From Gracilinanus agilis (taxonomy: Eukaryota), in the NCBI RefSeq assembly GCF_016433145.1, contig NC_058131.1, forward strand, positions 557,251,395 to 557,315,394: a stretch of DNA of 64,000 nt, read 5' to 3'. Position numbers and translations under genes: made by a program. Numbering within the stretch: the stretch's first letter is position 1; each line of letters begins with the position of its first letter. Of the stretch, positions 7,673 through 37,015 are shown piece by piece. The notes beneath the pieces were generated by a model. It worked only from the letters and a program-made list of their open reading frames with translations, was not told the origin of the DNA and made no database searches.

Positions 7673-7860
7673 ATATAAATAAAGGCTTTCCTCCTCCTCA
7701 TCTGACCTATTAGTTTTCTTCCCTCAAGTGTTTTTCTTCTCTTCCCCCACATCCTTACTCTCTACATGCTGTTTGTCCATTTTTTCTTCTTGTTGTTCCA
7801 CTCCTTTCTCTGCCCCACTAGGGATTAAAGTCTGAGCTAAGTCAGCTCCTGGGTTTGCAG

Positions 7861-10800
7861 CTACACAGGAGATAGACGAAGGACACAGGCAGACATCTCA
7901 GCTCGAGGCCGGGGCAAGGTTCCCAGGCAAAGCCAGCGGCCTAGGCCAGGGCAGTAGGCATGGATTAGGTGGGAGAGAGCATATGTTTGATGGCTATAGC
8001 CCCCCAAAACTAATATCTCCCCTTGAAGAGAGACTCCAGCAGCTCCCACATGAGGGGAGGGCAAAGGTTCCAGGCCCATCCATGTATCAGTCCTCGGTTC
8101 ATAGGTCTCAAAACTCAGCAGGTCCCCAGTCTCACCCAGACCTCCTGCTACGTAGAGACGTCCACCCAGTGCCACCATGATATGACCTGCCCGAGGGGTC
8201 TTCATGGGACTCAACAAGGTCCATGATGGCTTACGAGTAGGGCTGTAGTTAAAAAGAGAGGCCAGGTATTGACCAGTCTCATTGCAGCCTCCACTCACAT
8301 AGACCTGACCATCCAACACAGAGGCAGCATGTGCAAAGCAAGGTGTGGGGAGAGGTGGTGATGTCCTGTAGGAAGAATAAAGGACCATCTCAGTGGAGAA
8401 GGGCAGCTGATGTGCTCAACTTCCTGATGATATCTGGGCCTCCTTTTCCCTGCCTAATGGTAGGCCCTTCTAGCCCCCCTCATGCTTTTGACCATCTTGG
8501 GTCAGTTAAATGTTATGGATGTGGGTCATCTGGGCATCCCATTATTCCCAACAGAGACAGAAAGCACAAAGAACAGAACAAGAAGATTCTTGCTCAGGAA
8601 GGGATTGGGCTAGATAACCTCTGAGTTCTCTTACAACTCTGAGATTCTATAGGTCTAAGAACTGAGAAGACAGTTTCCTATCTGTGCATTTTGACAGTAA
8701 AGTAATAAAAGACCATTTTTGTGTGGGCATGAAGTGGCTGTAGTTTTAGGAGAGGCCTGGCTCCTCTCCATCACCAATCTCTTTGGAACATAGTGGGCAT
8801 TTAATAAAAGTTTGCTGCTTGCTCTCCCCTCTTTTGCTCACCTCCAGGCATCAAGCTTGGGATCGTAGGCCTCCACCGAATCCAAGGCCGCCCCTTTATC
8901 TCTCCCACCCAAGGCATAAAGATTTCCATCATGAGCCACCAGTGGGAAGAAGCATCGTGCCTGACCCATTGGAGCCAACTCTTCCCACTTACCTTGGCCA
9001 GGTGCCCACCTATGAACACACACAGGAAAGAGAGATGGTTAGACTTAGCTCTGGTACTTACATACTTATAGGCTGCTCTTGAAAGTCTTGCCTTCCCTCC
9101 TTGAGTTTTGCCCTCCAGATCTGGCACCCAACAGATTTTTGGTACTTTGTTGCTTTCAACTTCACCCAAAAAGGCCTCCCATGGAAATCCTCTGCCAGGC
9201 AGGTATAGCTAGAGGATGGAGAACTTTGGGGATATCTGGCTACTGCCACGAGGTTTCTACCTGGCAGAAGTAGCCCCAGTAGACAGGGTAAGACAACGAG
9301 GTACCAAAGACTGCACTGTGCCCCCACTTCCTCTCCTCTCCCATACCTGAGGACTGAAGCCAAGGTGTCTGAGTGGCTGTAGTAATGCTGCCCTCCACAC
9401 ACGTAGAGTTCATTCCCAGTGAGACTGGCAGCACCATGCCGGAAGCGCCCGGGAGGGGGCAAGGCAGGTAGCTTACCCCATTCCACCGTGTGGACCAGCC
9501 CCACGCCGCTGCAGAAGGCCCGTGCCCACCACACGCCTCGGGAGGGCTGACTCTGAGCTAAGTCGGGCGTGAGCCCATCCCCGCCAACCACCACCAGTGC
9601 CCGGGCGGGCTCCCGCCTCCTTTCTCGGCCTGGCACCTCTGCCTCTACCAGAATCTGATGCAGCAAGGATGAGGGCAGAGGCAGGGGCAGTCCGGCAGCT
9701 CTCACTCGCCGCAGCTCCCGGGTGGACATGCGACCAAAACGGACACAGCGAAGCAGAGGCTCGGCTTCAGGCTCTCTGCCAGTGGGATCTGCTGCCAACC
9801 ATCGCCATACAGCCTCGAAGGCCTCGAACTCTTGCTGTATGTGCAGCTCATCACTGGCCAGGAGGTTGAGCAGGCAGGGAGCAGGCAGGTCTGGGAAGGT
9901 AGGGCAGGAGGCCACGGCAGGCAGATGGGTGAGGAGGTAGTAGTGGGCTTTGTCCCAGAGTCTCTCCAGTCCTGGGACTTCGGCCACAGGAAGCAAGGCT
10001 AAGCATCGGAGAGGGCTGAGGCCCCGAGCCAAGGCTCTCTGGCACAGGGCCAAGCAGGAGCCGCTCTGGTACTGCAGGGCAGTCTGAGTAGCCCTCAGGA
10101 GGCCTGTCCAGTTTGTTTGCAGGGCCCCCGAGTAGGCAAAGGAGACGAGGAGCTGTAGGTCTGGGGCAGTGACTGTACGCAGAACAACAGCTGAGCCCTG
10201 GGATTCCCGCATCCCACTCAAAAGCATCGCCCCGAAGAACTCGCTCCCACAGACCAGAGCCACGCGGTGAACTGTGGGTACAGGAAATTTGGAAGGACAT
10301 GGAGTCAGAACAGATGCCAGGCCCCACCCTGACCCTGACAGCTTTACCTGTTTTCAGCACCTGCCTTTTATACTGTCTACTACAGCTATCCCAGGCCAGC
10401 TACAGAGTCTAATCTGTCACTTGGAACAGAACGTTATTCTTTTTTATATTTAATATAATTTCTCACTGACAGTAATTGCTACAAGGTCCAGGAGATGTGG
10501 CTGAAAAGACTCAGATAAGACCAACAACTCTGCCCACTCCTTGCACCTTGTGAAGATGGCTCTTTGCTTGGTAGCTGGTGCTGCCGTCACCCTAGGGCCT
10601 CTAGCTATTTTGCTTAGTTCTGCAATCAAACCTTTGTTTGGCACGTTGCCTGCCTCCTGGGGATTGATTGCTACACTCCAGGCTCATCTGTCTGCCTGTC
10701 TCTCTGGTTGCCCAAAAGTGCAGAGGGAGAAAACATGGCTCGAACTTCTGCTTTGGTGCAGATTAATAATAGAATTTTTATATCAAGTAGTCTTTAGTTT

Positions 10801-13800
10801 GAAGTGCTTTCAGATACCTTACCTTATGTGATCCTCACATCAGTGACAGATAATAAGATTACCATTTTTCAGATGAGAAAACTCAAAAATCAGAAAAATT
10901 TTCCTAGCTAACAATGGACAAGGTCAGGGTTAGAACTCTGGTCTCTTGACTCCAAATCCAATTCTATTTGTACAATTATACACTGGTTCTCCTTCTCCAA
11001 TGCCATTTCTTCCATCTGCCTAACTAGTAGTGTATAGGCTAGCATGTTAGAGCTGACTCAGAAGAGACCCTGATTTGAATCGCATCTCCAACACTTAGTA
11101 GCTGTGTGACCCTGGGCAGGTCATTTAATGTCTCTGAGCTTCAGCTTCCTCCTCTGTAAAATGGGTATAATATTGTATTCTACTACCTCTCCCTAAAGGT
11201 GAAGAAAATGCTTTGTGAGCTATACTGCTCTAGAATAGTGCTTTGAGTTCAAATAATGCATTGATCCTCACAATAACCTGAGTAGGGTAGGCTTTGTTAT
11301 TATTCCCATTCCCTGAGTCTGAAAAGAATTGATTGACTCACCCAGGATCCCATAGTTACTGCATATCTCAAGAAGGATTTGAACTCAGGTCTTCTTAACT
11401 CTAGGTCCTGAGCTCTATCCACTACAAACCCATAATTTCCTCACTGGCTATTGTTAATAGAGACCATCTTAGTTCATTTCCCATCTCTTCTTCTCTCCCA
11501 TTCTGAAAATGAAGAAACTGAGGTTTAGATTAAGTAAGTAGGTACGGCCAAGTTCAAGAAATGATATAGTATTTGAGCAAGTTTCCTTTGGGTTTGACAT
11601 ACAGCAGCTTCTTGGGTAGTGTGCCAGTATCTTTTCTGCATTCATTAAAACTGTTTGCAGTGAGCATTACTTCAATGCCAGTAAGTCTGTCCCATTCCAG
11701 GACCTCACTGCTGATAATCCTGTCCTATTCAGTTGGATTCATGAGACACGCTGCTGAAACTGCTCAGGGAATCAAATGGGACTTAGACCTATTGCAGGTG
11801 CTAGGAACACAGCCACACAGATTCAGTAGATCTTAGTAACTTTGAGGGCTGGCTCTTTCCTTTTGTCACTGGCCTTTAATGCTTTGGTACAGCACCTTAC
11901 ATCTACTGGGCACTTAATTATTGGATCAGACTGCAATACCATTGCTTTAAAGACCACTATATTACACAGATGTAGCTCACCTACAATTTTCTTCTGAAAG
12001 CCGTGGAATATAATGAAAAGCGGCAGACTGGCCACCAGAAAACCTGAGTTCTTGGTTTGTCTTGGTTCTGCCATTAAGTCTTTGCATGGTTCTAAGCCCC
12101 TAAATTGCCTTTTCCTTAAGAACCTCCGTTTTCTCACTTGGAAAATAAATTTGAACTAGATGATGTCTAAGACCCTTTCTACCTCTCAGTTCTATTACTT
12201 TGGATCCTGGCACCAGATTTTTTGGTCCTTTGGAACCTGGACCAAGCATTAAGGGCCAGGGACAAATGAAAGATCCAGCTTTCAAGATCTACCGAGGCCT
12301 GGGTGGCTGTGTTTCTGGTATTGGCCATAGCTATAAGTGTCACATCTGACTTGAGTCAGCAGCATTCCTCTCCTTGGCTGAACAGAAAAAAAATTAATTC
12401 ACATTTGACTTGTTTTGCCACTGGCTCCACTGGTAATAAGGAATGAGTCAGAAAGACTGTCATCTTGATTGCCAGGGCATTTTGGAATAAGAGCTTTAGG
12501 CTCATAGTAAACTGAATTCAAAGAAGGACAACCTACTTAGCAAATGTGAGATACCAGGTCTGCCAATGGGTGTCAAGCATATTTGTGTCAATTGATATTC
12601 ACTTGTTCCTTCCACTAGTACTGTGTCCCACCAGAGCATGGTCAGACCAACGAGGACAAGGTCTTGGGTTTATCCCCAATTGGCTGCTACTTGTATCTCC
12701 TGCCACAGATTGTACTAATAACTCCAGCCAGCTGTCCTGTAAATGAATATTGTTTATTTCAAGAGAGGACAGGGTTAGAGAGAGTGCAGGGTCAGTGTAA
12801 ATCTATCACCACTATGGGAAAAACAACTCAAAGCACATGTTCTATTTGACAGTAAATCCTGTGCTGCTTACCTTCATACATGGAGAGCACAAGGAATTTA
12901 TAAATAGACAAAAAGTCCATAATACCCTTGCAATTCATTTGCATCCAAGTTCCACTTTAATCCTTTTAATTTAGGAACTTTTTTTTAGGATTGAGAGCCA
13001 AGAGGGAGGTCCTCAGTTCAAATTTTGACTTTAGCCACTAGCTGTGTGACCCTGGGTAAATCACTTAACCCTCATTGCTTAGCCTTTATCCCTCTTGTTG
13101 ACTCTAAGATGGAACTCTGTAGGTAACTATCCTTGCCTCTCCTCATTTTTGCCTCATCTACCTCCCTCTCTCTCTCTGCCCACTTACCCTTCAGGTGGCA
13201 GTCCTCTGCTTCCAGATCCAGGTCACAGCCAATACCCTCATGATAGAGCTGCTTGATGCTACCCAGGTTCTCTCTCAACTCCTCGGCCTTATCTGGTCCC
13301 TGCTGCTCCTTGTCTCCTTGATTCTGGTCCAGACTCCTTACAGCAGCAGCTGCTACCCGAGGAGACCCCAGTACCTCCGCCGCGGCCAGTACATCCTCCA
13401 ACTTGGCGGGACCTACTACCCCCTCATAGGCGAAGGTCAGCACAGCCTCCCAGCCCTGGCGGGCTATATCGAGCTGTACGGGGGGCCGTGGGCCCCCATT
13501 CCCCATCAGGCGGGAGCGAAAGAGGCTGCTGACTGAAGCCAAGACCACCCCATGCACCGCGTACCTTCGACCCTGCACTAATATCTCTTCATCTAGCAGC
13601 AGGCTCAAGTCCCGAAGCCTTCGAGCTTCTGCAAAGAATTGAGCTGGGTGCTCATCACTCACTAGCATCTCCAGTTCCCCTTCATTCTTCTCCTCTTCCT
13701 CCTCCAGGGACAACGAGGGAGAAGGAAGATCCTCCGGGACTGAGGCCGGGTGGCCCGGTTCTTCCAGAGGGAAGGCGAGTAGACCCGAGTCCTCGTCTGG

Positions 13801-13920
13801 GGAGGAGGACCAGGAGGGACTTCGTCGGACTGGTAAAGGGAGGCTGGGGTTGTCCTTCTTGGAGTGAGGAGAAATTAGTCCCTCCTCTCGGGGGCAGATC
13901 ACCGTGCCTGGGGAGCTCAT
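7861..13920 (-). CDS. KLHL33: Kelch-like protein 33, long form with two BTB domains, BACK and Kelch repeats (776 aa)
   Basis: complement(join(7861..8365,8842..9009,9347..10271,13188..13920)) = 2331 nt. All introns are GT-AG with consistent phases, and the ORF ends in TAG at 7861-7863. Motifs: BTB (VHRVALVCGSEFFGAML), BACK, Kelch repeats (LYVCGG, LYALGG, VYVSGG, LYVAGG). Sits next to OSGEP as in human. Confidence 0.92.
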
Positions 13921-14429: not shown

Positions 14430-17400
14430 ACAGGTAAGGGACTGAGGTTGTGGCTGCCTGGGCCCGGAGGACACCCAATCCCCAGAGCCCCGTCCCCAGA
14501 TGACCTCTGTTCCACTTGTGGATAGTGGAGCTATACAGAGAAAACTCAGTGGCAGATCGGGGCTAAAGGAGGAGGGGTGAGAAGAGCCCAAGAAAGCCAA
14601 CTGAGCTTGGGGCAGTAGAAGGAAGAGCAAAGGAAGTCTAGTCTGAGGAGGAGCTGAGCAGGAACAGAGATGAGGTATTTAGGGGCAATCCCCTAAGATT
14701 TTGACCATTGACTTTTCTGTTCTCTATAAAGCTAAGGTCCAAGAGGAAACAAGGCTTCTGAACAGTGGAAACAGAAGCGGGCTTTATACTGGGGGTGGAC
14801 CAGGAGCCTGAGAGACTGAGGGAGGCACATAGAGAGCAAGAGTCAGGGCTGCAGATTGAAAATGATCCATTTCCAAGGTGTTGTGAGAGAGGGACAGGGT
14901 GCTCTAAAGCCCTCTAACTGTTGAAATGTTTAAATATTGTGCCTCCTACTCCCATCCATGATTGACTGGCTCTTGGAATAGGGATTGATGTGTGGGGCAT
15001 AACTGCAATTTTAACCCCAGGAATTAGTCCTGAGATTGTCTGAGGCTCAAGACATTAGGATTCCTAGGCTATACCCTCTGGGATCTTCTCCCAAGAGCTC
15101 CTCTTTGAAATCCTTCTGCAGCTTCAGAGATGGAGCTCTTGGGGTTGTGAAATTCTACCCCAATCCCCCACAAAATTCTCTGGGTCAGAAATCCCAGAGA
15201 AGTGGGTTTGGGAAGGGGCAGTGATGCTCTGCCCTCACTTTTACATAGTTGGAGGGCAGGAGGACAAGCTGAAGGTTGCTAAGGGCGGACTCTGTGGCCT
15301 AGGATAAAAGGGTAGAACTGACCTATCAGACTGACCTGACAGACACAGAAGGTGACTTCCAGGGTGATGAGTACCTGGTGGTGGGGGAGGTAGTAACCTG
15401 AGTAACTGTCCAGATTCTAAGTCACAGATTGGCCTAGACTCCCCATCTGACTGTCTAGTGTCTGCAGCCCCAACACCAGTGGTTTGCTTCCTTGACCTGA
15501 TTACCTTCACCAGTCTTGGAGGCCAGAGCATCATAGCCCTGCACTGAACCAGCAAAGGAAATGAATTCTGTGATCCTCAAGGCAGTCAGGTCATCTTGGA
15601 CACCAGGGCCAAGGATCTCTGGTGAAAGATAGTGGCAATTTCTTCTCTCTGCATCAACCTTTCCTTCTCTACCCCACTCTTTCTCACCACTGCACACTCC
15701 CATGGCTTCTCCAAGTTGGAATCAAAAGTCTTGGGCACCCACCTGGAGAAGAAGGGACCTCTAAGTCCACCTCTAGCCTACAGGATTCTAGACACTAGGC
15801 CCCCATGTGAGTTTTACACCAACTCTGCAATTCCTGGATGTCTCTAATGAAGCCAGCCCTCACTGGTAGACTTTCAGTAGCCTGGCTCAGGTGAGAATTC
15901 CCAAATCTCACCTTCACATGTCTAGACCTCTCTAACTCCATTCTTCTTCCTTATACCCAATAAGATACAAGTTCCTTAAAAAACCCTCATTTCACACCCA
16001 CTTCAGTCCTATTAATCTCCTACCCTCCTTTTTAACCCTGTTTCCCCACTTAAATTCCTGTTCTCACTGGAGGATCCTTCCCTTATCCTCTCCAAGAGAT
16101 AATGAATTCTTTTCTCCTAAATGAAGCTGATTGTAGACAATGACACCCAGAGGACCCCTGAGCAAAGCCAACTCCTGGTTCAGAGGGGTGGGTATATGCC
16201 TTCTCAGGTTGAGGAACCAGTGGCTAACTTCTTATCTGAAGAACTGAGAGAGGAACCTAAACAGAAAGATGAAGGGCAGGAAAGTGCTGAAACTGGTGAC
16301 CAAGCTAACAAGGACCCCATATGCTTTGGTTGGGTCATGGGAGTCATGATAAGGGGCTGGAGAAGGCAGTGTAGGGAATGAAGAGGACTGAAGAAACATG
16401 GAGGGGATAAAAAAAAAAGCAATGGGCTGCAGGAAATTTGGGATCAAGAGGAGCAAGATGGCCTATAGGGAAATTGCCAGACTGGACCTGGGAGATAAAT
16501 TCTTGGGAGAAGATTATTCATCTATCACTGGGATTTTCTCCCCCTAAGAAGCAATGCATGCTCAACATTTGGAGTGTCATCCTCTTCCTTTGACTATCTT
16601 GGATCACAGCCCAGAATGGCATAGGTATGAATCAACAGAAGGACTTCGACAGAGTAAAAGAGATACAGTTAAGAGGAAAGGGTGTCTGGGTATTCGAATC
16701 CAGAGATATTAATTAAGACTCTCCCAGGACTCACGTGGGCCATAATTTTCCTTTCCACCTTGGTCACCACCATCACTGGCTTGTCCATCTCAGCCATTTC
16801 CACCAATGGCAAAGTCAAACCTGGTAAGTTTGATCTCCTCTTCCTCCTTCTTCCATTCTCTCCTCCCCATAGCCAATCCCTCCTCTCATCTGTGGATCTG
16901 CCAATTCCACTGAAGATAGTAATCTAAATTCAACTCTGGACAGCCCATACCAGCCCAACTTCTTTCCTACCATCCCTAGATTTGGGGAGGAGTTGCTTCT
17001 TGGTTCCTGACCAATCTTTTCTTCACTCTGTCACTAGGAGGCACTTACTTCTTAATCTCTTGAAGTCTGAGTCCAGAGCTTGGAGGCTCCATTGGCCTCA
17101 TCTTCACCTTTGCAAGTGTTGTGGCTGTGGCTATGCATACAGTGGGCTTTGCTGAGACTTTCTGTGACCTTCTCTGGGTATGGCCCCCAATCCCACTCCC
17201 TCCCATCTCCTACTCCTGACCTGTTTTTCCAGAAGTGCATCTCTCCTTGACAGAGAACATCCTGGGCTTCTTCTCCTGGGGTGCCCTGACTTTCCCTATT
17301 TCAAGGACTGCCTGTGAACCTCTCCATGCCTTTCCTCTCTTTTCCCATTCCTGCCCATCCTAGGAACATGGAATGCAGCTTTAGCAGATCGAGCTAGAGA

Positions 17401-17630
17401 ACCAATTGAGGATCGAGGGTGTTATGACTGTGATAGTCTTGCTAGCTGTCTCACTGGCTGGAATGGAATGGGAGTCCAAGGCAGGCACACTAGGACTTAT
17501 TGGAGTAGGATTCAGAGAACAGGATGGGAGATGCAAGAGCTGAGGGGAAAGCCCATAGGTGAATGCAGAAAGAGCTAGGCTTAAAATGGGGGCACTTCTT
17601 AAAAAAGAAGGAAATTTAGAGAATCTAGAA

Positions 17631-17838
17631 CAGGGGTCGGTAACCTTTTTGGCCGTGAGAGCCATAAATGCCACATTTTTAAAAATGTGATTTCGTGAGA
17701 GCCATACAGTGCTCACAGTGTGCGCTCCTGTAACAGCACCTGAAAAAAAAATGGATTTTATGGCTCCTGTAGAAAGAGCCATATCTGACCCTCAAAAGAG
17801 CCAGATATGGCTCAAGAGCCATACGTTGCCGACCCCTG
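17631..17838. mobile_element. hAT/Charlie-type MITE (208 bp) in intron 6 of the SLC12 relic
   Basis: TIRs caggggtcggtaac / gttgccgacccctg (13/14 match). 8-bp TSD atctagaa / atctaaaa with a TCTAGA-type target. Confidence 0.9.
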
Positions 17839-18841
17839 ATCTAAAAAGAATAGTAAATACAGAGCCTTGGGGAAATAAAATGGAGACTTCTAAACAAGAG
17901 ACCTGTGGTGGAAGGAGGTAGGACATCTCTCCATAGTCTTAAGGCTGATCTCTTTCCAGCGGGAGGGAACCCATTAAATCTCAGGAATTCTTCTGACCAG
18001 TATCCTTAAAGCCTGATGTTTGTCAATGTGAGGTCTTATTAGAGGGACACTGAATGAAGAAGAGTTATAATGGAATTTAAATGAAGCTGTTTATTGGGGG
18101 GAAGCAAAAGTATTGCTTACCTCATCCTAACATTTCTGACCTCTTTTTATATACTTCCTTTTGTCACGATCTTCCAGGCCCAAATTATTTTTTTCTTCTT
18201 TATTATCCTCTCTTTCATCAATTATTTCATTGGGACTCTGTTTCCTGCAAACCCCACCCAATAAGCTACCAGCTTCTTTGGGTACCAAGGTAAGGTGAAA
18301 AGGAAGGGGACTAGGAGATATGAAGGAAGAGAAATGCTTACAGGGTTGTTCAGTCCTCCTGGTTTGAAGTAAATCACTAGAACTAAGCTGGGTTAGAGGA
18401 AAACAGTACTAGAGGCCATTAGGTGGTAGTGGATAACTTGCTGGGCCTAGAGTCAGGAAGACCTGAATTTGAATCCTGCCTTAAACATTTGCTATCTGTG
18501 TGACCCTGGACACTTAACTTCCCTTCCTTTAATTTCTTCATTTGTAAGATGAAAGGGTTGGACTCCATGACCTCTAAGGTCCCTTCCAATCCTAAATCTA
18601 TGAGTCTGTGACTTATTAGGTGAAGGGATGCCAAAGGATACTGGGCTAAAGTTTTCCTTATAGCCTTATTCCTGCTTTTCCCTGGCCTTCTCTCTAAGGA
18701 ACATTTTCCTAGGCAATCTTGTCCCACAATATCGAGGTCCAGAAGGCAGCTTCTTTGGAATGTTTTCCATCTTTTTCCCTTCAGCCACAGGGATCTTGGC
18801 TGGAGCTAATATCTCTGGGTACCTCAAAGTGAGCTGGGGCC

Positions 18842-18974
18842 NNNNNNNNNNNNNNNNNNNNNNNNNNNNNNNNNNNNNNNNNNNNNNNNNNNNNNNNNNN
18901 NNNNNNNNNNNNNNNNNNNNNNNNNNNNNNNNNNNNNNNNNNNNNNNNNNNNNNNNNNNNNNNNNNNNNNNNNN
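18842..18974. other. Assembly gap (133 N) in intron 8 of the SLC12 relic
   Basis: Run of N. Confidence 1.
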
Positions 18975-20298
18975 TTACTTTCCTTTTGCTTCCAGGACCC
19001 AACCATGGCCATCACCAAAGGGACCCTACTTGCCATCTTTTGGACTATCCTTTCTTACCTGAGCATCACAGCTACTATTGGTAAGAACCTCCTCACTTAT
19101 CTCTCCTCCAGAAATGCCTGATCCTTATTTGGTTCAGTCTCTGAGAGGAAACAAAGAGGCTGGAATGAAGAGGATGTAATGAACAGAAGTATAATGAGCA
19201 GAACTACTGATTACTCAGTCAATGAATGTATATTCATATCTGTCAACTAATTATTGATTTTCATATAATCTTACAGTGTTCTTTGGTGACTAAAATGCAG
19301 ACACACTGAGGCTGCGCCATCTGGGCAGTAATATTGAAAAAGAAATTCCTGTTCTGGGAGTAGCTTGGATCTTGTTGTATCTAGTCTGCACTGCTGCCCT
19401 TAGATAGGGACCCCTTCCTGGGAAGGGATCTGTATCCTCAGCTTCCTTCTCAGGCTCCTGTGTGCTTCAAGATGCTTCAGGGAACACAACAGATATGAAT
19501 GTGGGGAACAAGAGCTATTTGGGACTAGAGTGTCCATATGGCTGGGACTTCAGTAACTGTCGGGAGCTTGGCTCCTGTACCTATGAATTGTCTAACCACT
19601 ATCAGGTGAATGAGAGGAGGTAAAGAGATGCTCAGCTGAGGATACAATTCTAAGATAGGTGAGTAACAGCAGTTCTTCTGGTCCAAGGACTTTGGGGAAA
19701 GCCAAGAAGAGGAGGGGATAAGGAGAGAATGATTGGTTAAGAACTTCAATTTCTATTCCTGACCAATCTCATTTCTCTAAACTATGAGCCTGGTGTCTGC
19801 CTTCAGTCTTCTGATGTCTGCTGGAATCTTCAGTGCTACCCTCTCTTCTGCTCTCTCCTGCTTTATCTCTGCTCCCAAAGTCTTCCAGGTCAGTCAGCAC
19901 TTTGGAAAGGCCAAGAAAAATGGGAAATGTGTGACTGATGGGGTCAGTCAGGTAGGGACCAGCTGTTGGCACACTTTAGGGATGTGCCTCCCTGCTACAG
20001 TGTTCTTGAGTTGGAGCTGTGACTCAGAGACAAAGGGTCAAATTAAAGATGCAGAAAAAGGATAAGGGTAAAGATGGCTCCAGATGACTGTTCCTTAAAA
20101 CAAAACAATACCAAAAACCTGAGGCCCTTATGTATGCAGGATTAATCAATAAATGAATGACTTCACCAGGACTGAGACAGAATTGGTGAGATTTCTCTTC
20201 CCCATAAACTCCACAGACTTCTTGTCCCCTCAAAGCTGCCCAGGAAATTCACTCTATTCTGATTTACCTGTCTGAAAATGTTTAGTCCTTCCCTCCCA

Positions 20299-20543
20299 CC
20301 ACTGGTGTGAGGTAAATGTTTAACAATCAGCTCTCCAAAAACTTTTTAAAAAATGTACAATGTGACACACAAATTTAATCTTATTATTAACATTTTCTGT
20401 ATGACTTTCTTAAGTCTAGAAAAATCAAAGAAACAATCTATTAAGCCCAGCATTTGCCAGTTTCAAAGGTATAAATGTTCACATTGAAAATTTAATAGTA
20501 AGCTCTCAGGAACTTATAGGAACCTGTACTAGTATACCATTGG
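20299..20543. mobile_element. Degraded non-autonomous DNA transposon
   Basis: Imperfect TIRs ccactggtgtg...tataccattgg, AT-rich core. Confidence 0.45.
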
Positions 20544-21749
20544 CTCCTACTCTTCTATCATATTCCTTTAAAATGCCTCTTGGCCTAGAGTCCTGTACAT
20601 CCTTGGCACTCTGATTCCCTAGCCTCTCTATAACACCTCCCCCATGCCATGAACTGGTCTTTGCTTTTCTCCTTTTCTAAACACTGAAAAAGAAGGAGGC
20701 ATGAGTGTTCTGTTTTCCTCACCATCTGGGGCCCCCAGTCCAGGCTCTTGCTAAACCACTCTTTCAGTGTCTGTGCCAGGACAAGCTGTATCTTCTTCTT
20801 TGGCTTCTTTGGGAAGGGATATGGCAAGAACAATGAGCCACTGCATGGGTACTTGCTCACCTTCATCGTTGCTGTAGGCTTTATTCTCATTGGTAAACAT
20901 TTCTCCTCATCCTATCAAGGCTCCAGATATTGCTTTGTTCCCCCTTCTATGTAGCTTATTCCTCTCACATGCTTCCCTTCCACAAGGGATCCACAAGATT
21001 ATTTTCTTAAATGCTAGGGAACTGGAGAAAAGGGCAATAGGGGTAGTGGATGAGGAAGGGACTGTGCAAAGCACTTTAATAATATTATCTGATTTGAAGG
21101 AAGGAGTATAAATCCTGGAGAACTTGATGGAGGAATGTGTAATTCCTGTGTCCCTCATTTCGGATGCTCTCACTACATTTTCTCATTTCTTCCTTAAAGC
21201 TAAGCTGAATGCTATTGCTCTTATCATCTCCAACTTCTTCCTCTGTTCCTATGGCCCTTGTCAACTTCAGTTGCTTCCATGCTTCACTCACCCACTTACC
21301 TGGTAACTACAAGGGCAGGCTTGGGAATCTCTTTGACTGGGGAAAGAATTTGGGAGGTGGACATTGAGAGGAGGGTAGTGGGAAAAGAACCAGAAGCCAA
21401 TGGGTAGTCAGTGGTTGGAATGGAAACTTGGAGTCTGAGGAATGGTTGGGGATTAAAGGTGAGGGACAGCTTATGATCTCCTTTCTGGCCCAGGTTGGCA
21501 CCCCTCTTTCCATGGTATGTTCCTTGGCTATCCCTTCTGGGCTTCCTGCTCTGCCTGTTCATCATGTTTCTCCTCACCTGGTGGGCAGCACTGATAGCTG
21601 TATTACTCATTCTTCTTCTGCTACTGTACAGCTTCTACAAGAAGCCTGGTAAGGAAGGGTGTGGAGAGAGGTAGGAGTGGAAGAGAGCATGAACCAAGAG
21701 AGGAGAAGAGCAGAGGGTACTCCCAGTATAGGACACCCCCCCCCGAACT

Positions 21750-21752
21750 GTG

Positions 21753-21804
<52 letters not shown>
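21750..21804. repeat. (TG)n microsatellite
   Basis: Direct inspection. Confidence 0.95.
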
Positions 21805-21806
<2 letters not shown>

Positions 21807-21986
21807 AAAGTGGGGTTGGACGACCAAATCTAGTTAGCTGTCTACATTTGTAAAAACCTTTCTTAGCTTGAGGGCCTGAAGGACAAAAACTGGCAGGTAT
21901 TTTTGGCCTGGAACCATAGTTTGCCAAGCCCGGGGCCAGAGAGAAGTAGCATCTGAGCCTCCCCCTCCTTAGGAGTGAGAGACCTT

Positions 21987-22202
21987 GGAAGCAGCTGGGT
22001 AGCTCAATGGATTGAGAGCCAGACCTAGAGAGAGGAGGTCCCAGGTTAAAATTTGGCCTCAAGATACTTCCTAGCTGGATGATCCTGGGCAAGACACTTA
22101 ACCCCCTTTACCTAACCCTTACTGCTCTTCTGCCTTGGAACCAATACACAGTATTGATTCCAAGATGGAAGGTAAGGATTTAAAAAAAGGAAAAAAAAAA
22201 AA
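21987..22202 (+). mobile_element. Opossum-type SINE with TSD in intron 14 of the SLC12 relic
   Basis: TSD gagtgagagacctt (21973-21986) / gagcgagagacctt (22203-22216). Confidence 0.88.
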
Positions 22203-23319
22203 GAGCGAGAGACCTTACTGCCTTCCTTGGCATTGCTGTTCTAGTTCCCCTGCTTCATCCTATATCGGTTAGTTCTCTGACCATTTAACCCATATTCATA
22301 GATGTGAATTGGGGTTCCTCAGTCCAGGCTAGCACCTACCACATGGCTCTGACCTACTCAGTAAGCCTGACCAGTGATCACGTCAAGAACTTTCGGTGAG
22401 ATACTCCTTGACCAGGCAGAGGTACTAAATTGTAGAGAATCTGTGGGGGAGAAAAGGGGAGATAACAGAGTAGGGAATTATCAGGGAGAGAAAGACTCTA
22501 GTAGGAGTAATCCATGACCATTTAATAACAGAGGGAAAGGGGAAAGGATGAGGGAAGACAGAGGACACCAGGATTCCAAGCCTTATCTTAACCTGTTTTA
22601 AGAGTAGGGATGAGCTCTAGAGAAAGATGGATGTGGGTCAAAGCATACTGTCTTTCCCATCCATGTATTTATGGTGTTTAGTTTGGGGTTTGGGGTTAGT
22701 ATGGTTTTTCAACAATGATCAATATGTAAGTGTGTTTTGCATTAAAATTTTTAAAATAAGGGTAAGGAAGAGTCCTTAGGTTTCTCTCCACATCTTTCTA
22801 AAGTTAACCATGGATAGAAGAAATAGCTGATTAGTTATCTTAATGCCATTCCTGCTGTCCTTTCTTCAGCCTTCAGTGTTTGGTGCTGACTGGACCACTC
22901 AGTCAAAGACTAGTACTGGTGGATTTTGTGGGTGCTTTTACCAAGAATATCAGATTTATGATCCGTGGTGTTGTGAGGAAGATTAGGTAGTAATTAATTA
23001 AGTATTAAGGATGTACCTAGCAGGAAGGTTGGAGCATTCCAAGATGGAATGAAGGAGCAGGAAGGTGCTTGTGCTCTGAGAGAGACTCCATTAGGAGTTG
23101 GCACAAACTGTTGTTAGCCCTGGGAGATCTCAGAGTAAAGGACACCCTACATCCTGATTTCCCTGGGATCCTGAGTGGTGGTGATTTCAAACAAATGGAC
23201 AAGAACTACAGAGCAGCACCAAGAAGAGGAGAAGTTTGGGATCTGGTGGACAGCATCTCAAGCACACTCTCTACTTGGGTACCTTGGCTTTTGACATCCT
23301 GAGATCATCTGTGGATTAC

Positions 23320-23756
23320 TGTGAGAAACCCCAAAGCCACCCTCAGCCCTTAGATGTGCTAGTCAAGCCTGGCAGGAACCAGATCTGATGCAGCCTCCCA
23401 GAGACTCCATTACTGCTCCTTTGGCCCTGTCTGCTTAGATCACTAAGATTAGAGTAGAGAAGTCCTCCCCTTACCCTGTGGTTTTGCCCTTTAGGTTTTA
23501 AGTATAGAAATCCCTTTCCCACCTTTTAGTTAAACATAATTAAACCTGTTAAAACCTTTTACCTTGCCTGCTGGTTTCTAGACTCTGGCCTAGGGAAAGC
23601 TGAGTGACAGTTGAGGCCAACTGCCATTCCTGTGTTAATCCAGTGAATTCTGGTCTCCCCATCCTGGTCCAGTCTCTCCTACTACCCAGAGTGTGTACCC
23701 ACAACCATTTAGATTTATTGTAACATCCCTGGTGCCCTCCATTATCTATTTTCACA
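23320..23756 (+). mobile_element. LTR-like segment in intron 16 of the SLC12 relic
   Basis: tgtgagaa...ttttcaca termini and an ATTAAA signal. No clean TSD. Confidence 0.4.
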
Positions 23757-26700
23757 GTAGGAATGTAGTCTTGGTAAGTGGAAACATGGGGAGATTAGAA
23801 ATACTGCCTAAAAGGTGTCAAGAGCACTGGGAGTGGGGGCGAGGGAGGGAGGAAGGAAGGTAAGTTTGATCATATAACTTGGGAAAACTTAGGTGGAAAT
23901 TTATTGTTTTTATTATTATTTTTGTTATTATTATAATTGGTATTTTTTAAAGGTCAGGGTATAACAATAACTTTGTTTCTAGGGAAACAAGACAAATATT
24001 TGTCATCTGAGCTCAGGTCAGTGGGGATTGGGATAGATTAAAATCAGGAAACCTCCTGACCTCTAATCTCTGCTGGCCCCTTGGGAGACTCATTCATTCA
24101 GGCATTCAGGATTCAGAGGACCATGTGAAGTGGTTCAATATATGGAAGATTCGTTCCTTTTACATAGCTATCTCTTCACCAGAGCTTCAGGCTGGGACAG
24201 AGTCTCATGCAGGTGAGTGCTAAGGACCAAAACTCTCACCTATTTGTATACCTACCATCTCTCTCATCCCCACCATACTGCCTCCCACATTCCTTCATCC
24301 ATCTTTTTATTACCTCTTCTCCTAGGTCTCAGGTCTGGGCAGGCTGAAGTCTTATGGGTTAGTATTGGGATGTAAGCATGATTGGCAGGAGATGTCCACA
24401 CTAAGTGGGCATCATACAGTGAGTGTGGGAGGAAGGGGTCCCAACTATACACCCTCCATTCAGTGTGGTGGGAAGGGAGAGATGGGACTTGGAGACAGGA
24501 AATAGTAGAGGATGTGATCATGGTGATCCTCCAGGCCAATGAAAAGGTGGTGACCCCAGGGAAGGGTGATCCCTTCAGGTCCTATCCCCTCAGTAATTAC
24601 TTCTCCTTCCCCATTAGTGATGCTTTTGATTACAACTATGGAGTCTGCCTTCTGAGAATACTAGGGGGACTGAGTGTGACTCCTCGTCGCCGAGTCCATG
24701 ATAAATTGGGGAGGTCAGGGATTGGAAGGTGAGAGATAAGTAATTAAGGGATTAGATATGGAATAAAAAGAGTATATTCTGGGTAGCACAATGAGCAGGA
24801 CTCAGGGTGGAAAGGAACCAGATACTAGGATTCAAACAAAGTGGATTTGTTACCGTATCTTCAGTCTGTCTATATATTAGGCTTTCCTAGGACTGATTTT
24901 GGGGGAGGGAAAGGAAATTTTAAGTGCACTTGTTGGAAACTCAGGTGGGAGAGATTTGGGTCAAGTGACTTGGGGTATAACTAAGGCTTAGTATGGTCAG
25001 GAAGTACAGTCTCTGAATTTGCTTTGAAGTTCTTCCAAATTCTACGGCCCACACATTCTTATCTCTCCAACCCATACTTGGGAGTCGCCCAAACAGTACA
25101 CAGAAACACTCCTTCATTTTAGGGAATCTGGCTATTCATAAGTATAGGAGTGGGGTGGGGAAGAAAAAGTTTAGGGAGGTGACCAAGATCTTTTTCTTCT
25201 GCTCTCCTCTACCTGCCCTTCCACCAGTGAATCTCGTGTTTTTGGACTCTGAAGGAACAGATGCCTTGGAGAAAGGGGAAGGGGCCACTAAATACAGAGA
25301 AGGTAATAAGGTAGAGGGAATAGCAGTGGGCAAGGAGAAGGGAACTTATACAAGAAGGAGATGCCAGGGTTAAAGAAGGGGAAAAATATACAATTGTGAC
25401 TCCATAATCCACTAGGATAGAAAGTGTAGGGGGTGTCTTTCCCAGAAAGTTAATTCCTTTGGGAGAAAGGGAAATCCATGGGGCTGGATTGAGGGTAATC
25501 AATCAGTTGGGGGGGGTAGTCTCAGTTTCTCCCCACCTGCCCCCTTTTGGGCAGCACCACTAGACCAGCAGTCCTGAACCCTGTTCCAGTCCAAGTAGGG
25601 CAACTGGACAGTGGACATATACTGGCTGAGTGATGATGGAGGTAGGGATCCTAGGACCCTCATTCCACCCCCCTAATTCCTACCTCCTTGGGAGGGTGAT
25701 TCTGAGAATGAGATGAGCTAGTCAAAGGGAAGTACAGAAATAAGTTTTCTGTCTGATGAGCTCAGCCCTTAAAATCCAAAGACAGGTCTAGGAGTTTCAG
25801 AGGGGGATTCCCAATGACAGGAAACAAAGCTAGTCTCATTTCTTACATTGCTTCCCAGACCAATCTCTTCTCTATCTTAGATCCCCTTCACATTTTATCT
25901 TTTATCCAACTTCCCTCATTTCTATTCTATATTGGAGTTGGAAGGATGTGCTGTGGAGAAAAGGGGTAACTGTCTATCCTCCTCTTTCTTTACAGGGTTG
26001 ACAGTACTGATCCCCTACTTGCTGACTCACTGGAAGAAGTGGACTAAATGCCCTTTTCATGTTTTTGTGAGCAGCCCTCCCGGATGCCTAGAGGAGAAGC
26101 ACAGAGTGAGCAAGGCACAAGGGAGACGTGAAGATGGCTCAGGGTCAGGGGCTAGCTCTAGACCTTCACTGTATGACTGGAAGTATATAACAACAGGAGT
26201 GGTAGTGAGTTAAAGCTATTCATACAATATACTCTCCATTATCTCCCCTTCTGCTAGGATCCACTCTCTCCTCAGCAGATTCCATCTAGGCTTCCAGGAG
26301 GTGGAAGTGCTTCCTGAACTCACAGGCAAACCAAAGGAGAAAAGGTGAGGACCACCCCCACTACTCTACTGTATTTTCTTTCTTGCCGTACCTTCTTTCA
26401 CACAACTGAGAGGCTTAACCTGCCATAATCAGATGGCCCACAACTTAACCAGAGCTGCTGAGTAGGAAGACAGAGGTTGAGATGCTCAAACAGGGTTTTA
26501 AAAAACATGACTAAAGCACCAGGGACTAACCAGAGGGAAACAGAGTAGCTTTTAATGTTCAATGGGATGGTTAGGGCTGAGTTGACTGAAGTGGGAGAGG
26601 TACAAGATTAGTGAAACAGTGCAAAGAACAAAACACTGATGCTCTGTGGTCCTGGGAAGTCTGTGGGATGGCAATGACTACATTTGCTTTGGGCTAGGCC

Positions 26701-27475
26701 TGAGCTTTCTTTGCATCTGTAGTCAAAATGCATTTGAAGACCTGGTGGCCTCACAATGGCTACAGGAGTCACCATTAGAGGGAGAGCTGGACTCAATCCC
26801 CGATATCAATTCTGCTTCTCTAGGGAGCATATCTGAGCAGGAGTTGCAGGCTAATCAAAGGAAGTAGGGTCCAAGAGTTAATCAGCATGGTTGTAACACA
26901 GTGACCAGCTCATCCCTGACCCATTTACGTCTCCCCTCCTTGCAGTCTGAATGTCAGATGTGTCTTCTTGAAGTCCTGCAGCAATATTCCCAGAAGGCTG
27001 CCCTTATTATGAATTTAGGAAGACCCCCAAATAGCAAAGGAAATAGATTCCAGGACCCAGGGTGGGGAATCCCTAATCACCAAGGAAGCCTGAATATGTA
27101 GTCTTACTTTTTGACACTCCATATCACAATAAGAGCCTGCCTGTGGCCCCAAGATCAGTCTGTCCTGGGGCTCTGTACATGGCACGGCTGGAGATGTTGT
27201 CTTGGGGCTTAGCTGCCCCCATAGTCTTTATCTGTGGAAACCAACAGGACACACTTACTCTATACTGCCAGTGACAGCTGCAGACAAAGGAGGGAAGAGA
27301 AGGCCCAGGGAACTACAGGGCCCCAGCTACAGGATTTTTGAATTTCCAGTGAAGCCTTGGGCAAAGGCTCAGCTCTCCATAAAGTAGGGGCTCTCCTTTC
27401 CCTCCCAAGCACCCAAATAGGGTATATAACACTAAAAAGGGGTTCCCTCTTCCAGACATCCCCTACCTCAAAAGT

Positions 27476-27996: not shown

Positions 27997-34431
<6,435 letters not shown>

Positions 34432-35453: not shown

Positions 35454-37015
35454 ATGCCAAAGCGAGGGAAGAAGGAAGTATCAGTGAAGGATGGGATCAG
35501 TGAGGAGGAGTCAGAAACTAAAGGTAATTTGATGGTTTTCATTTGTTTATCCTCCCCAGGAGTCAGAGGCCTAAGTGGTGGGAGATTTTAGTTTACATTA
35601 TCAGGTTTATGTGGATCTCCATAAATGGGAAACGGTGGCAGAGTAGGTTTCCATTGGGTGGGTCTCTTGGTCAGCTGGGTTTCATAGACCACTTGAGGGA
35701 AAAGTAGCCCCTATCCTTGAGAAACCTGTCTTTCTATTTCCAATAAAACACTTAACAGAGCCTGAGCCTAAGAAGACTAAGAAGGGTGCAAAAGAGAAGG
35801 ATGCAGCTGGAGAAGGATCTGCCTTGTATGAGGACCCCCCAGACAAGAAAACCTCACCTAGTGGCAAATCTTCTACCCTCAAGATTTGTTCTTGGAATGT
35901 GGATGGGCTTCGGGCCTGGATCAAGAAAAAGGGTTTGGATGTGAGTATGGCTCTGAGAGAAAAAAAAAAACAACTTTTACTTTGGGGTTTCAAAATTACT
36001 GATTTGCTTTTGGGAATCTAGTCGTATGCTCAGTTTTAAGATGAAATATTTCCCCCTTAAAATGCCAATACCTATTCAGGGAAATTTAGGCTGTAGGATG
36101 AAATGAGTTGTGGGGGATGAAGTAAGACAAGCAGCTCCTTGCATTCCAACGTGACTTGTATTCCTTTCTTTTTGGACAGTGGGTAAAGGACGAAGCCCCT
36201 GACATCCTTTGCCTCCAAGAGACCAAATGTTCAGAGAGCAAGTTGCCACCTGAGCTTCAGGACTTGCCTGGTCTTACCTACCAGTACTGGTCATCACCCA
36301 ACGATAAAGAAGGATACAGTGGTGTGGGTCTTCTTTCTCGCCAGTGCCCACTCAGTGTCACATATGGCATTGGTGAGTTTATTGCCCCTGACCCCTATGG
36401 CTTCCAAAGCCTGGGTGTGTTTAAACATTCTCCAACCTCACTTCCATTTTTTTTTAATGTTTTATTTCTATATGGGTTTGTTGTATCCATTCTGTAGGTG
36501 AAGAGGAGCATGATCAGGAGGGTCGGGTGATAGTGGCGGAGTTTGAGGCATTTGTGCTGGTGACAGCCTATGTGCCCAATGCAGGACGGGGACTGGTTCG
36601 TCTGGAATACCGACAACGATGGGATGAAGCATTTCGCAAGTTTTTGAAGGGGCTAAATGCCAAAAAGCCACTTGTGCTCTGTGGAGACCTCAATGTGGCC
36701 CATGAAGAGATTGACTTGCGTAACCCCAAAGGGAACAAGAAAAATGCTGGTTTTACTCCACAGGAAAGACAAGGTTTTGGGGAACTACTCCAGGCAGTGC
36801 CATTAACTGATAGTTTCCGTCATCTCTATCCAGAGGCCGCTTATGCTTACACTTTTTGGACCTACATGATGAATGCCAGAGCCAAGAATGTTGGCTGGCG
36901 GCTTGACTACTTTTTATTGTCCCAGGCCTTACTCCCTGCCCTGTGTGATAGTAAGATTCGGTCCAAAGCCCTAGGTAGTGACCATTGTCCCATCACCCTC
37001 TTGCTGGCATTGTAA
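35454..37015 (+). CDS. APEX1: DNA-(apurinic/apyrimidinic site) endonuclease 1 / Ref-1, 320 aa
   Basis: join(35454..35523,35759..35940,36180..36372,36498..37015) = 963 nt. [53 protein letters not shown]. The ATG exon acceptor is at 35387. Confidence 0.97.

What the first reader, a model, noticed from the sequence alone, without database searches (positions are those of the whole stretch)
15620..27274. Complete 26-exon fossil of a second Na+/Cl- cotransporter gene (SLC12A10/NCC2) between KLHL33 and OSGEP
Seen: 26 collinear exon remnants cover the whole SLC12 protein, from the N-terminal regulatory region to the terminal YCQ*. Many match my recalled SLC12A3 exon sizes exactly (76, 96, 140, 112, 131, 85, 108, 112, 83, 87, 68 nt). 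Stops: TAA/TGA 15845-15850, TGA 16591, TGA 17061, TAG 17382, TAA 18262, TAG 25596. Frameshifts: exon 12 (+1), 13 (+1), 14 (-1), 17 (-2), 18 (~-14), 22 (-2), 24 (-1). Knowledge: slc12a10/ncc2 is a gill and epithelial salt transporter in fish, reported intact in amphibians, reptiles and a few mammals and lost in most. Inference: this is the marsupial copy, dead but complete enough to rebuild the ancestral protein and date the loss. The ORF track shows only fragments of it.
Basis: partly seen in the sequence, partly recalled or inferred. Interest (0 to 1): 0.88.

Follow-up and report, generated by a model that had tools for sequence, protein, structure and literature searches.

The report
Dead second salt-transporter gene (SLC12A10)
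This opossum-like genome keeps, between KLHL33 and OSGEP, a complete but broken copy of the second Na-Cl cotransporter gene SLC12A10/NCC2; the gene is already known to be dead in most mammals, and here it seems to have died late.

Summary
Window 15.7-27.3 kb (+) carries all 26 exons of a Na-coupled SLC12 gene in order. Exon sizes and phases match intact NCC2 genes of turtle, echidna and donkey.

I count 8 in-frame stops, 8 frameshifting indels, 2 in-frame deletions and 6 destroyed splice sites. A separate run of about 30x depth (X1) reproduces every lesion with no indel differences.

The N gap (18842-18974) lies wholly inside intron 8, between an intact donor and acceptor, and removes no coding sequence.

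Orthology is firm:
- The gene order KLHL33 | NCC2 | OSGEP | APEX1 | PIP4P1 is the same as in echidna, donkey and turtle.
- In an ML tree the sequence sits in the SLC12A10 clade, sister to eutherian NCC2.
- Forcing it into SLC12A3 is rejected (AU p about 1e-75).

Pseudogenisation of slc12a10 in most mammals was published by Motoshima et al. 2023, so the kind is known.

Two additions:
- Branch dN/dS is only about 0.10, so the gene stayed constrained for most of the marsupial branch. It probably died roughly 10-25 My ago, independently of the eutherian losses.
- RNA-like runs splice several dead exons and join exon 23 to an exon 7.9 kb downstream, near the OSGEP/APEX1 promoter.

The parts
7841..13920 (-). 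KLHL33 (upstream flank; BTB, BACK and Kelch exons)
   Evidence: tblastx to donkey and turtle KLHL33, up to 77% identity. Pfam BTB, BACK and Kelch hits.
15739..15865 (+). E1 remnant: the N-terminal regulatory motif region, with tandem stops TAA 15845 and TGA 15848. Donor GT is kept. No start codon is recognisable.
   Evidence: Spliced alignment to platypus, turtle, caecilian and Xenopus N-termini. X1 contig is identical.
16214..16348 (+). E2 (variable acidic linker, ends ...FGWVMGVM). Donor GT>AT at 16349.
16549..16624 (+). E3, 76 nt, TGA at 16591
16728..16823 (+). E4, 96 nt, no lesion
17038..17177 (+). E5, 140 nt, TGA at 17061
17364..17480 (+). E6, 117 nt, TAG at 17382. GC donor, shared with donkey.
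18178..18289 (+). E7, 112 nt, TAA at 18262
18698..18828 (+). E8, 131 nt, coding part intact. Acceptor AG>AA at 18696-18697. GT donor at 18829.
   Evidence: (AA_permease 185-217)
18842..18974 (.). Assembly gap (133 N) inside intron 8. No coding sequence is affected. Not filled.
   Evidence: Intron 8 is 79-87 nt in donkey, echidna and turtle.
18996..19080 (+). E9, 85 nt, no lesion
19454..19605 (+). E10, 152 nt (extracellular loop with conserved cysteines), no lesion
19781..19888 (+). E11, 108 nt. Acceptor AG>AA at 19779-19780.
20768..20892 (+). E12, 125 nt: +1 insertion near 20801
   Evidence: Skipped in the RNA-like contigs.
21200..21302 (+). E13, 103 nt: +1 insertion near 21253
21494..21648 (+). 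E14, 155 nt: -1 deletion near 21511
22302..22395 (+). E15, 94 nt: in-frame 6-nt deletion
22870..22972 (+). E16, 103 nt: 9 nt shorter at the 3' end (in frame)
24088..24212 (+). E17, 125 nt: +4 (TCAT duplication at about 24091-24098) and a 2-nt deletion at about 24197
   Evidence: X1 contig has no indel.
24326..24418 (+). E18, 93 nt: 14-nt deletion
24618..24700 (+). E19, 83 nt. Donor GT>AT at 24701.
25228..25302 (+). E20, 75 nt (variable linker)
25555..25641 (+). E21, 87 nt: TGA at 25575 and TAG at 25596
25996..26105 (+). E22, 110 nt: 2-nt deletion near 26100
   Evidence: SLC12 246-271
26258..26344 (+). E23, 87 nt, no lesion
26723..26864 (+). E24, 142 nt (as in donkey). Donor GT>TA at 26865.
26946..27013 (+). 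E25, 68 nt. Donor GT>TT at 27014.
27134..27274 (+). E26: first base of the exon lost (-1). Ends ...LTLYCQ then TGA at 27272-27274.
   Evidence: SLC12 375-418/418, 39.9 bits
27997..34431 (-). OSGEP (downstream flank)
   Evidence: tblastx. PDB 6gwj_K (annotated as 'Probable tRNA N6-adenosine threonylcarbamoyltransferase'; I take it to be human OSGEP), E 2e-34.
34247..34278 (+). Start of a downstream exon (after AG) that RNA-like contigs join to E23
35811..37015 (+). APEX1
37929..40306 (-). PIP4P1/TMEM55B

Best explanation
This is the orthologous copy of SLC12A10 (NCC2, also called NCC-beta) in a marsupial, reportedly an opossum. SLC12A10 is the second vertebrate Na-Cl cotransporter gene. Here it is a unitary, unprocessed pseudogene at its ancestral place between KLHL33 and OSGEP.

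All 26 exons and their introns are retained, but the reading frame is broken at least 22 times: 8 stops, 8 frameshifts and 6 lost splice sites. The first break is already in exon 1, so no transporter can be made.

Because equids and monotremes keep an open gene, the therian ancestor had a working one. This loss is therefore independent of the eutherian losses (inference by parsimony).

The low dN/dS on this branch indicates that the gene was maintained by selection for most of the time since the marsupial-eutherian split. It decayed only recently, with a neutral distance of roughly 0.03-0.06 substitutions per site, on the order of 10-25 My. This date is a rough inference.

The locus is still transcribed at a low level, and its surviving splice sites are used. 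This gives exon-skipping, non-coding RNAs.
For: - Exon structure: collinear 26-exon alignment with conserved sizes and phases.
- Domains: Pfam AA_permease and SLC12 pieces lie in order. PDB hits are to SLC12A3 and SLC12A2.
- Synteny: same order and orientation as echidna, donkey and turtle.
- Identity: 71-72% to monotreme NCC2 and 68-69% to equid NCC2, against 57-59% to opossum and mouse SLC12A3.
- ML tree: inside mammalian NCC2 (100/100), sister to the eutherian copies (99/95).
- AU tests reject membership of SLC12A3.
- Lesions are reproduced without any indel difference in contigs of run X1, depth about 30.
- Branch estimates: dS 0.44, dN 0.045, omega 0.10 with bootstrap range 0.07-0.14. Position-2 changes are 6.3% against 30.8% at position 3.
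- GT..AG joints at seven predicted exon borders appear in runs X2 and X3.
- No marsupial NCC2-like protein appears among the best hits of donkey NCC2, while monotreme copies rank at the top.
Against: - Exon 1 is only partly recognisable and no start codon was found.
- The organism is coded. 'Opossum' rests on an earlier unchecked note and on the tree position.
- X1 may come from the same individual as the assembly, although its 5 SNPs suggest it does not.
- dS is near saturation in the pairwise comparisons and base composition differs strongly (GC3 0.55 against 0.88). The date is therefore crude.
- The absence of any annotated marsupial NCC2 protein fits an older, shared loss better than a late one.
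- An intact copy elsewhere in this genome cannot be excluded from one window.
Confidence: 0.95

Rival explanations
1. The gene is intact, and the stops and frameshifts are assembly or sequencing errors.
For: There is an assembly gap in the locus. One-base indels (E12, E13, E14, E26) are the typical error type of long-read assemblies.
Against: Contigs of run X1 (depth about 30) cover every exon with 0 indels and only 5 SNPs. Lesions include 14-, 9-, 6- and 4-nt events, 8 stops and 6 splice-site changes. The gap is intronic.
Confidence: 0.01
2. It is a decayed recent duplicate of SLC12A3 (NCC1), not the NCC2 ortholog.
For: Databases label most NCC2 genes 'solute carrier family 12 member 3-like'. 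Single exons score about equally against SLC12A3 and SLC12A2 in the PDB.
Against: The tree and AU tests reject it. It shares synteny with intact NCC2 genes. Identity is higher to NCC2 than to the opossum's own SLC12A3. The E6 GC donor and the 142-nt E24 are shared with donkey NCC2.
Confidence: 0.01
3. The protein-coding gene is dead, but the locus has been taken over as a functional non-coding transcription unit. Surviving NCC2 exons would serve as exons of a spliced RNA that runs on towards the OSGEP/APEX1 promoter region, either as a regulatory lncRNA or as an alternative upstream start of APEX1 transcripts. This does not exclude the main explanation.
For: Two runs (X2, X3) hold contigs with canonical joints: E11>E13, E13>E14, E17>E18, E18(cryptic donor)>E20, E20>E22, E22>E23, and E23>34247. 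One contig of 2316 nt has about 1500 nt beyond the last joint.
Against: The run kind is not on record. Depth over most of the pseudogene is only 2-6, and intronic pieces are covered too, as expected of transcriptional noise or pre-mRNA. Contigs are not single molecules. The remainder of the 2316-nt contig was not seen. There is no conservation test.
Confidence: 0.12
4. The loss is old, dating to the stem marsupial or earlier, and is shared by all marsupials.
For: No marsupial NCC2-like protein appears among the database hits. The locus carries 22 lesions.
Against: Omega on the branch is 0.10, with a bootstrap range of 0.07-0.14. Death 80 My ago on a branch of about 160 My would give at least 0.5. 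Changes at otherwise invariant residues are no more frequent than in donkey (12.7% against 12.1%). The numbers of stops and indels fit a neutral distance of about 0.05.
Confidence: 0.15

Closest known systems
SLC12A10 / NCC2 (NCC-beta) of horse, donkey, platypus and echidna
   Same: Same locus (KLHL33 or TEP1 | NCC2 | OSGEP), same exon sizes and phases, 68-72% amino-acid identity, same clade.
   Different: Those genes have open reading frames. This one has 8 stops, 8 frameshifts and 6 dead splice sites.
slc12a10 pseudogenes reported in most mammals (Motoshima et al. 2023, Physiol Genomics 55:113; quoted in PMC11381001 and PMC11145369)
   Same: A unitary pseudogene at the same chromosomal locus. 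The pangolin and Hipposideros gene models P0003, P0010 and P0002 are translations of such copies and group with this one.
   Different: This copy keeps all 26 exons and shows low branch dN/dS, so it looks younger. Whether that paper covered this species could not be checked, because the paper is not held.
SLC12A3 (NCC, the thiazide-sensitive cotransporter)
   Same: Same subfamily and 26-exon plan, 57-59% identity, same Pfam domains.
   Different: It is a different paralog clade and locus. The opossum's own SLC12A3 (P0276) is a separate, intact gene.

Membership tests
SLC12A10/NCC2 orthologs | Groups with named slc12a10 sequences and not with SLC12A3 in a phylogeny | tested here: met
   ML tree: NCC2 clade 96/99, mammalian NCC2 100/100. 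AU test rejects SLC12A3 placement, p 2e-75.
SLC12A10/NCC2 orthologs | Conserved position between KLHL33/TEP1 and OSGEP-APEX1 | tested here: met
   (echidna, donkey, turtle loci). (window flanks).
SLC12A10/NCC2 orthologs | 26 coding exons with conserved sizes and intron phases | tested here: met
   Exon 1 is only partly recognisable.
SLC12A10/NCC2 orthologs | Open reading frame encoding a 12-TM AA_permease domain plus the SLC12 C-terminal domain | tested here: not met
   8 in-frame stops and 8 frameshifts. Domain pieces are present only as fragments.
Unitary (unprocessed) pseudogene | Introns retained at the orthologous locus, not a retrocopy | tested here: met
   25 introns lie at the conserved positions.
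Unitary (unprocessed) pseudogene | Disabling lesions are real and not assembly artefacts | tested here: met
   X1 contigs are identical across all exons, with 0 indels.
Unitary (unprocessed) pseudogene | No intact copy elsewhere in the genome | not testable with these tools
   Only one window is available. Indirect evidence: no marsupial NCC2-like protein among the database hits.
Transcribed pseudogene / exapted non-coding exons | Spliced RNA molecules containing the dead exons | tested here: inconclusive
   GT..AG joints appear in contigs of two runs of unrecorded kind. No reads or strand information were available.

The most novel reading that the evidence does not exclude
NCC2 was kept under purifying selection in the opossum lineage for roughly 85-95% of the time since the marsupial-eutherian split and died only some 10-25 My ago. 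Marsupial losses would then be recent and lineage-specific: other didelphids or Australidelphians lost the gene independently, or a few may still have it. In addition, the surviving exons are now spliced into a non-coding RNA that joins exon 23 to an exon beside the OSGEP/APEX1 promoter.
Probability: 0.4. Interest if true: 0.45.

Novelty: new member of a known kind. Interest (0 to 1): 0.3.

Why it matters
SLC12A10 is the fish gill salt-uptake transporter. In tetrapods its role is unclear, with ovary and gonad expression reported in gar, frog, turtle and horse.

A well-preserved marsupial copy adds a third mammalian lineage to monotremes and equids, which helps reconstruct the mammalian ancestor. 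It also shows that the gene was useful to marsupials until late, which bears on why mammals gave it up repeatedly.

As a single annotation fact it is modest, because the general pattern is already published.

Tried and rejected
- The one whole-library HMMER search with exon 14 returned mostly short fragments and pseudogene-derived models.
- The first homolog search with P0085 gave only teleost SLC12A3 and cost one of three searches.
- Motoshima et al. 2023 (PMC9988527) is not held. Citing papers gave no marsupial detail.
- Local tblastn dropped many exons, so I replaced it with my own spliced aligner.
- Pairwise dS is near saturation (pS 0.6-0.7) and skewed by composition. I therefore used a parsimony-node estimate and treat the date as rough.
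- The 5' loose end of the RNA-like contig (before 23849) matches nothing in the window. It lies in a purine-rich stretch next to a high-copy repeat, so its origin is unresolved.
- No start codon could be found for exon 1.
- I did not read or use the contig letters that extend into the N gap.
Full report
**Observation**

Stop-free frame segments in 15.6-27.3 kb (+) contain unmistakable SLC12 motifs. Two exons alone hit SLC12A3 and SLC12A2 structures (E 4e-11 and 2e-9).

I obtained intact reference proteins through three searches:
- horse and donkey SLC12A10;
- echidna and platypus 'SLC12A3-like';
- turtle, lizard, amphibian, coelacanth, bichir and teleost slc12a10;
- SLC12A3, including Monodelphis;
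- NKCC1 and NKCC2.

I then fetched the genomic loci of echidna, donkey and loggerhead NCC2.

A spliced protein-to-genome aligner that I wrote reproduced the three reference gene structures exactly. The turtle gene has 26 coding exons.

On the window, echidna NCC2 aligns with score 2762, against 213 for the reversed sequence. Nucleotide alignments of each exon with its flanks, against turtle, echidna and donkey, give the lesion list.

**Lesions**

- In-frame stops (8): 15845, 15848, 16591, 17061, 17382, 18262, 25575, 25596.
- Frameshifts (8): E12 +1, E13 +1, E14 -1, E17 +4 and -2, E18 -14, E22 -2, E26 -1 (first base lost).
- In-frame deletions (2): E15 -6, E16 -9.
- Splice sites lost (6): E2 donor AT, E8 acceptor AA, E11 acceptor AA, E19 donor AT, E24 donor TA, E25 donor TT.
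- No lesion: E4, E9, E10, E20, E23.

Only the conserved 3' part of exon 1 is recognisable (the N-terminal regulatory motif, 15739-15865). No initiator codon was found.

E24 is not shifted. One stop (25575) was missed. The splice-site losses were not listed.

**The gap**

E8 (131 nt, full length) ends at 18828, followed by GTGAGC. The N run starts at 18842. After it come a polypyrimidine tract and AG, and E9 (85 nt, full length) starts at 18996 in the expected phase.

Intron 8 is 79-87 nt in the three reference genes. The gap is therefore intronic and removes no coding sequence. It was not filled.

**Are the lesions real?**

Run X1 behaves like a DNA run, with even depth of about 30. Its contigs cover 15500-18841 and 18975-27300 apart from repeats. 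They show no indel and five single-base differences: 17029, 19361 and 20732 are intronic, 24140 is in E17 and 26291 is in E23. Every stop, frameshift and splice change is reproduced.

**What it is**

The flanks are as follows:
- KLHL33 (BTB, BACK and Kelch exons, minus strand, 7.8-13.9 kb);
- OSGEP (minus strand, 28.0-34.4 kb; best PDB match 6gwj_K, which I take to be human OSGEP);
- APEX1 (plus strand, 35.8-37.0 kb);
- PIP4P1/TMEM55B (minus strand).

This is the same order and orientation as around the intact gene in echidna, donkey and turtle.

The conceptual translation was kept in scratch only, with X at every break. Its identities are:

| Compared with | Identity |
|---|---|
| Monotreme NCC2 | 71-72% |
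| Equid NCC2 | 68-69% |
| Turtle NCC2 | 60% |
| Opossum and mouse SLC12A3 | 57-59% |

In an ML tree of 49 sequences rooted on NKCC, SLC12A3 and SLC12A10 form two supported clades. The window lies in mammalian NCC2 (100/100) and is sister to pangolin plus equids (99/95), with monotremes outside them. Monodelphis SLC12A3 lies in the other clade.

Forcing the window into the SLC12A3 clade, or into mammalian SLC12A3, costs 330 and 400 log-likelihood units (AU p 2e-75 and 2e-45). One caveat: frames were chosen with echidna as the guide, although the residues themselves come from the window.

The tree position fits a marsupial.

**When did it die?**

Equids and monotremes have open genes, so the therian ancestor did too. 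This loss is therefore independent of the eutherian ones.

The estimate uses 765 aligned codons. The therian-node codon could be inferred by parsimony for 596 of them.

| Branch | dS | dN | omega |
|---|---|---|---|
| Window | 0.44 | 0.045 | 0.10 (bootstrap 0.07-0.14) |
| Donkey | 0.21 | 0.048 | 0.23 |

At sites invariant in the other three species, the window differs at 6.3% of second codon positions but at 30.8% of third positions.

A gene dead for half of the branch would show omega of at least 0.5. The neutral distance since death is therefore at most about 0.045-0.06. That range fits the eight stops, since about 6 are expected at 0.05 given that 4.2% of substitutions are nonsense. It also fits the ten indels.

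This points to a loss on the order of 10-25 My ago. The date is rough for three reasons: dS is close to saturation in the pairwise comparisons, GC3 differs strongly (0.55 against 0.88), and only one marsupial sequence was available.

One fact points the other way. No marsupial NCC2-like protein appears in the database hits.

**Transcription**

Two small runs (X2, X3) have patchy cover and canonical GT..AG joints. They join E11 to E13 (skipping the frameshifted E12), and E13 to E14. An E17 extended 240 nt upstream is joined to E18. A cryptic donor inside E18 is joined to E20, E20 to E22 (skipping E21 with its two stops), and E22 to E23.

They also join E23 (26344|GT) to AG|34247 on the plus strand. 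That site is 65 nt from OSGEP exon 1 and upstream of APEX1.

These joints confirm seven predicted exon borders. They also show that the dead locus is transcribed and spliced into non-coding products.

**Comparison and novelty**

Motoshima et al. 2023 reported that slc12a10 is present in fishes, amphibians, non-avian reptiles, platypus and horse, and is pseudogenised or deleted in birds and most mammals. Pseudogenes at the same locus were found in various mammals (quoted in PMC11381001 section 4.1 and in the introduction of PMC11145369). I could not read the paper itself.

The kind is therefore known. This is a new, or possibly already listed, member.

**Verdict**

Novelty and interest are modest.

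Noticed in passing
window 19768-26344 and 34247-34278 (+): RNA-like contigs in runs X2 and X3 splice the dead NCC2 exons with exon skipping. They join E23 to an exon starting at 34247, next to OSGEP exon 1 and upstream of APEX1. This may be a read-through or alternative upstream transcript.
   Followed up: partly
window 17481-17482; L002 11485-11486: The exon 6 donor is GC instead of GT in both the window and the donkey gene, while echidna and turtle have GT. This is likely a shared therian feature.
   Followed up: partly
L001 18494-18535: The echidna NCC2 gene model contains a 42-nt 'intron' with a CC acceptor inside exon 24. It looks like an annotation device rather than a real intron.
   Followed up: no
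P0002, P0003, P0010 (Hipposideros larvatus, Manis pentadactyla, Smutsia gigantea): Deposited 'hypothetical protein' and 'SLC12A3' models of 331-485 aa are translations of decayed NCC2 copies. The Smutsia model groups with equid NCC2 on a very long branch.
   Followed up: partly
L002 15408-15433: The donkey NCC2 isoform X1 replaces exons 15-16 by a 26-nt exon and lacks exon 20. From my recollection of the Motoshima et al. 2023 abstract (the paper itself is not held), horse slc12a10 has many truncated splice forms, which this would fit.
   Followed up: no
window 17490-17887, 21991-22187, 22976-23960: Intronic high-copy repeats, with summed word depth in X1 up to millions. There is also a (GT)n microsatellite at about 21746-21812 in intron 14.
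   Followed up: no
window 18456-18841 and 18975-20340: Independent X1 contigs also end about 40 nt inside the assembly gap from each side and do not join, so the gap region is hard to assemble in that run too. The letters were not read.
   Followed up: no
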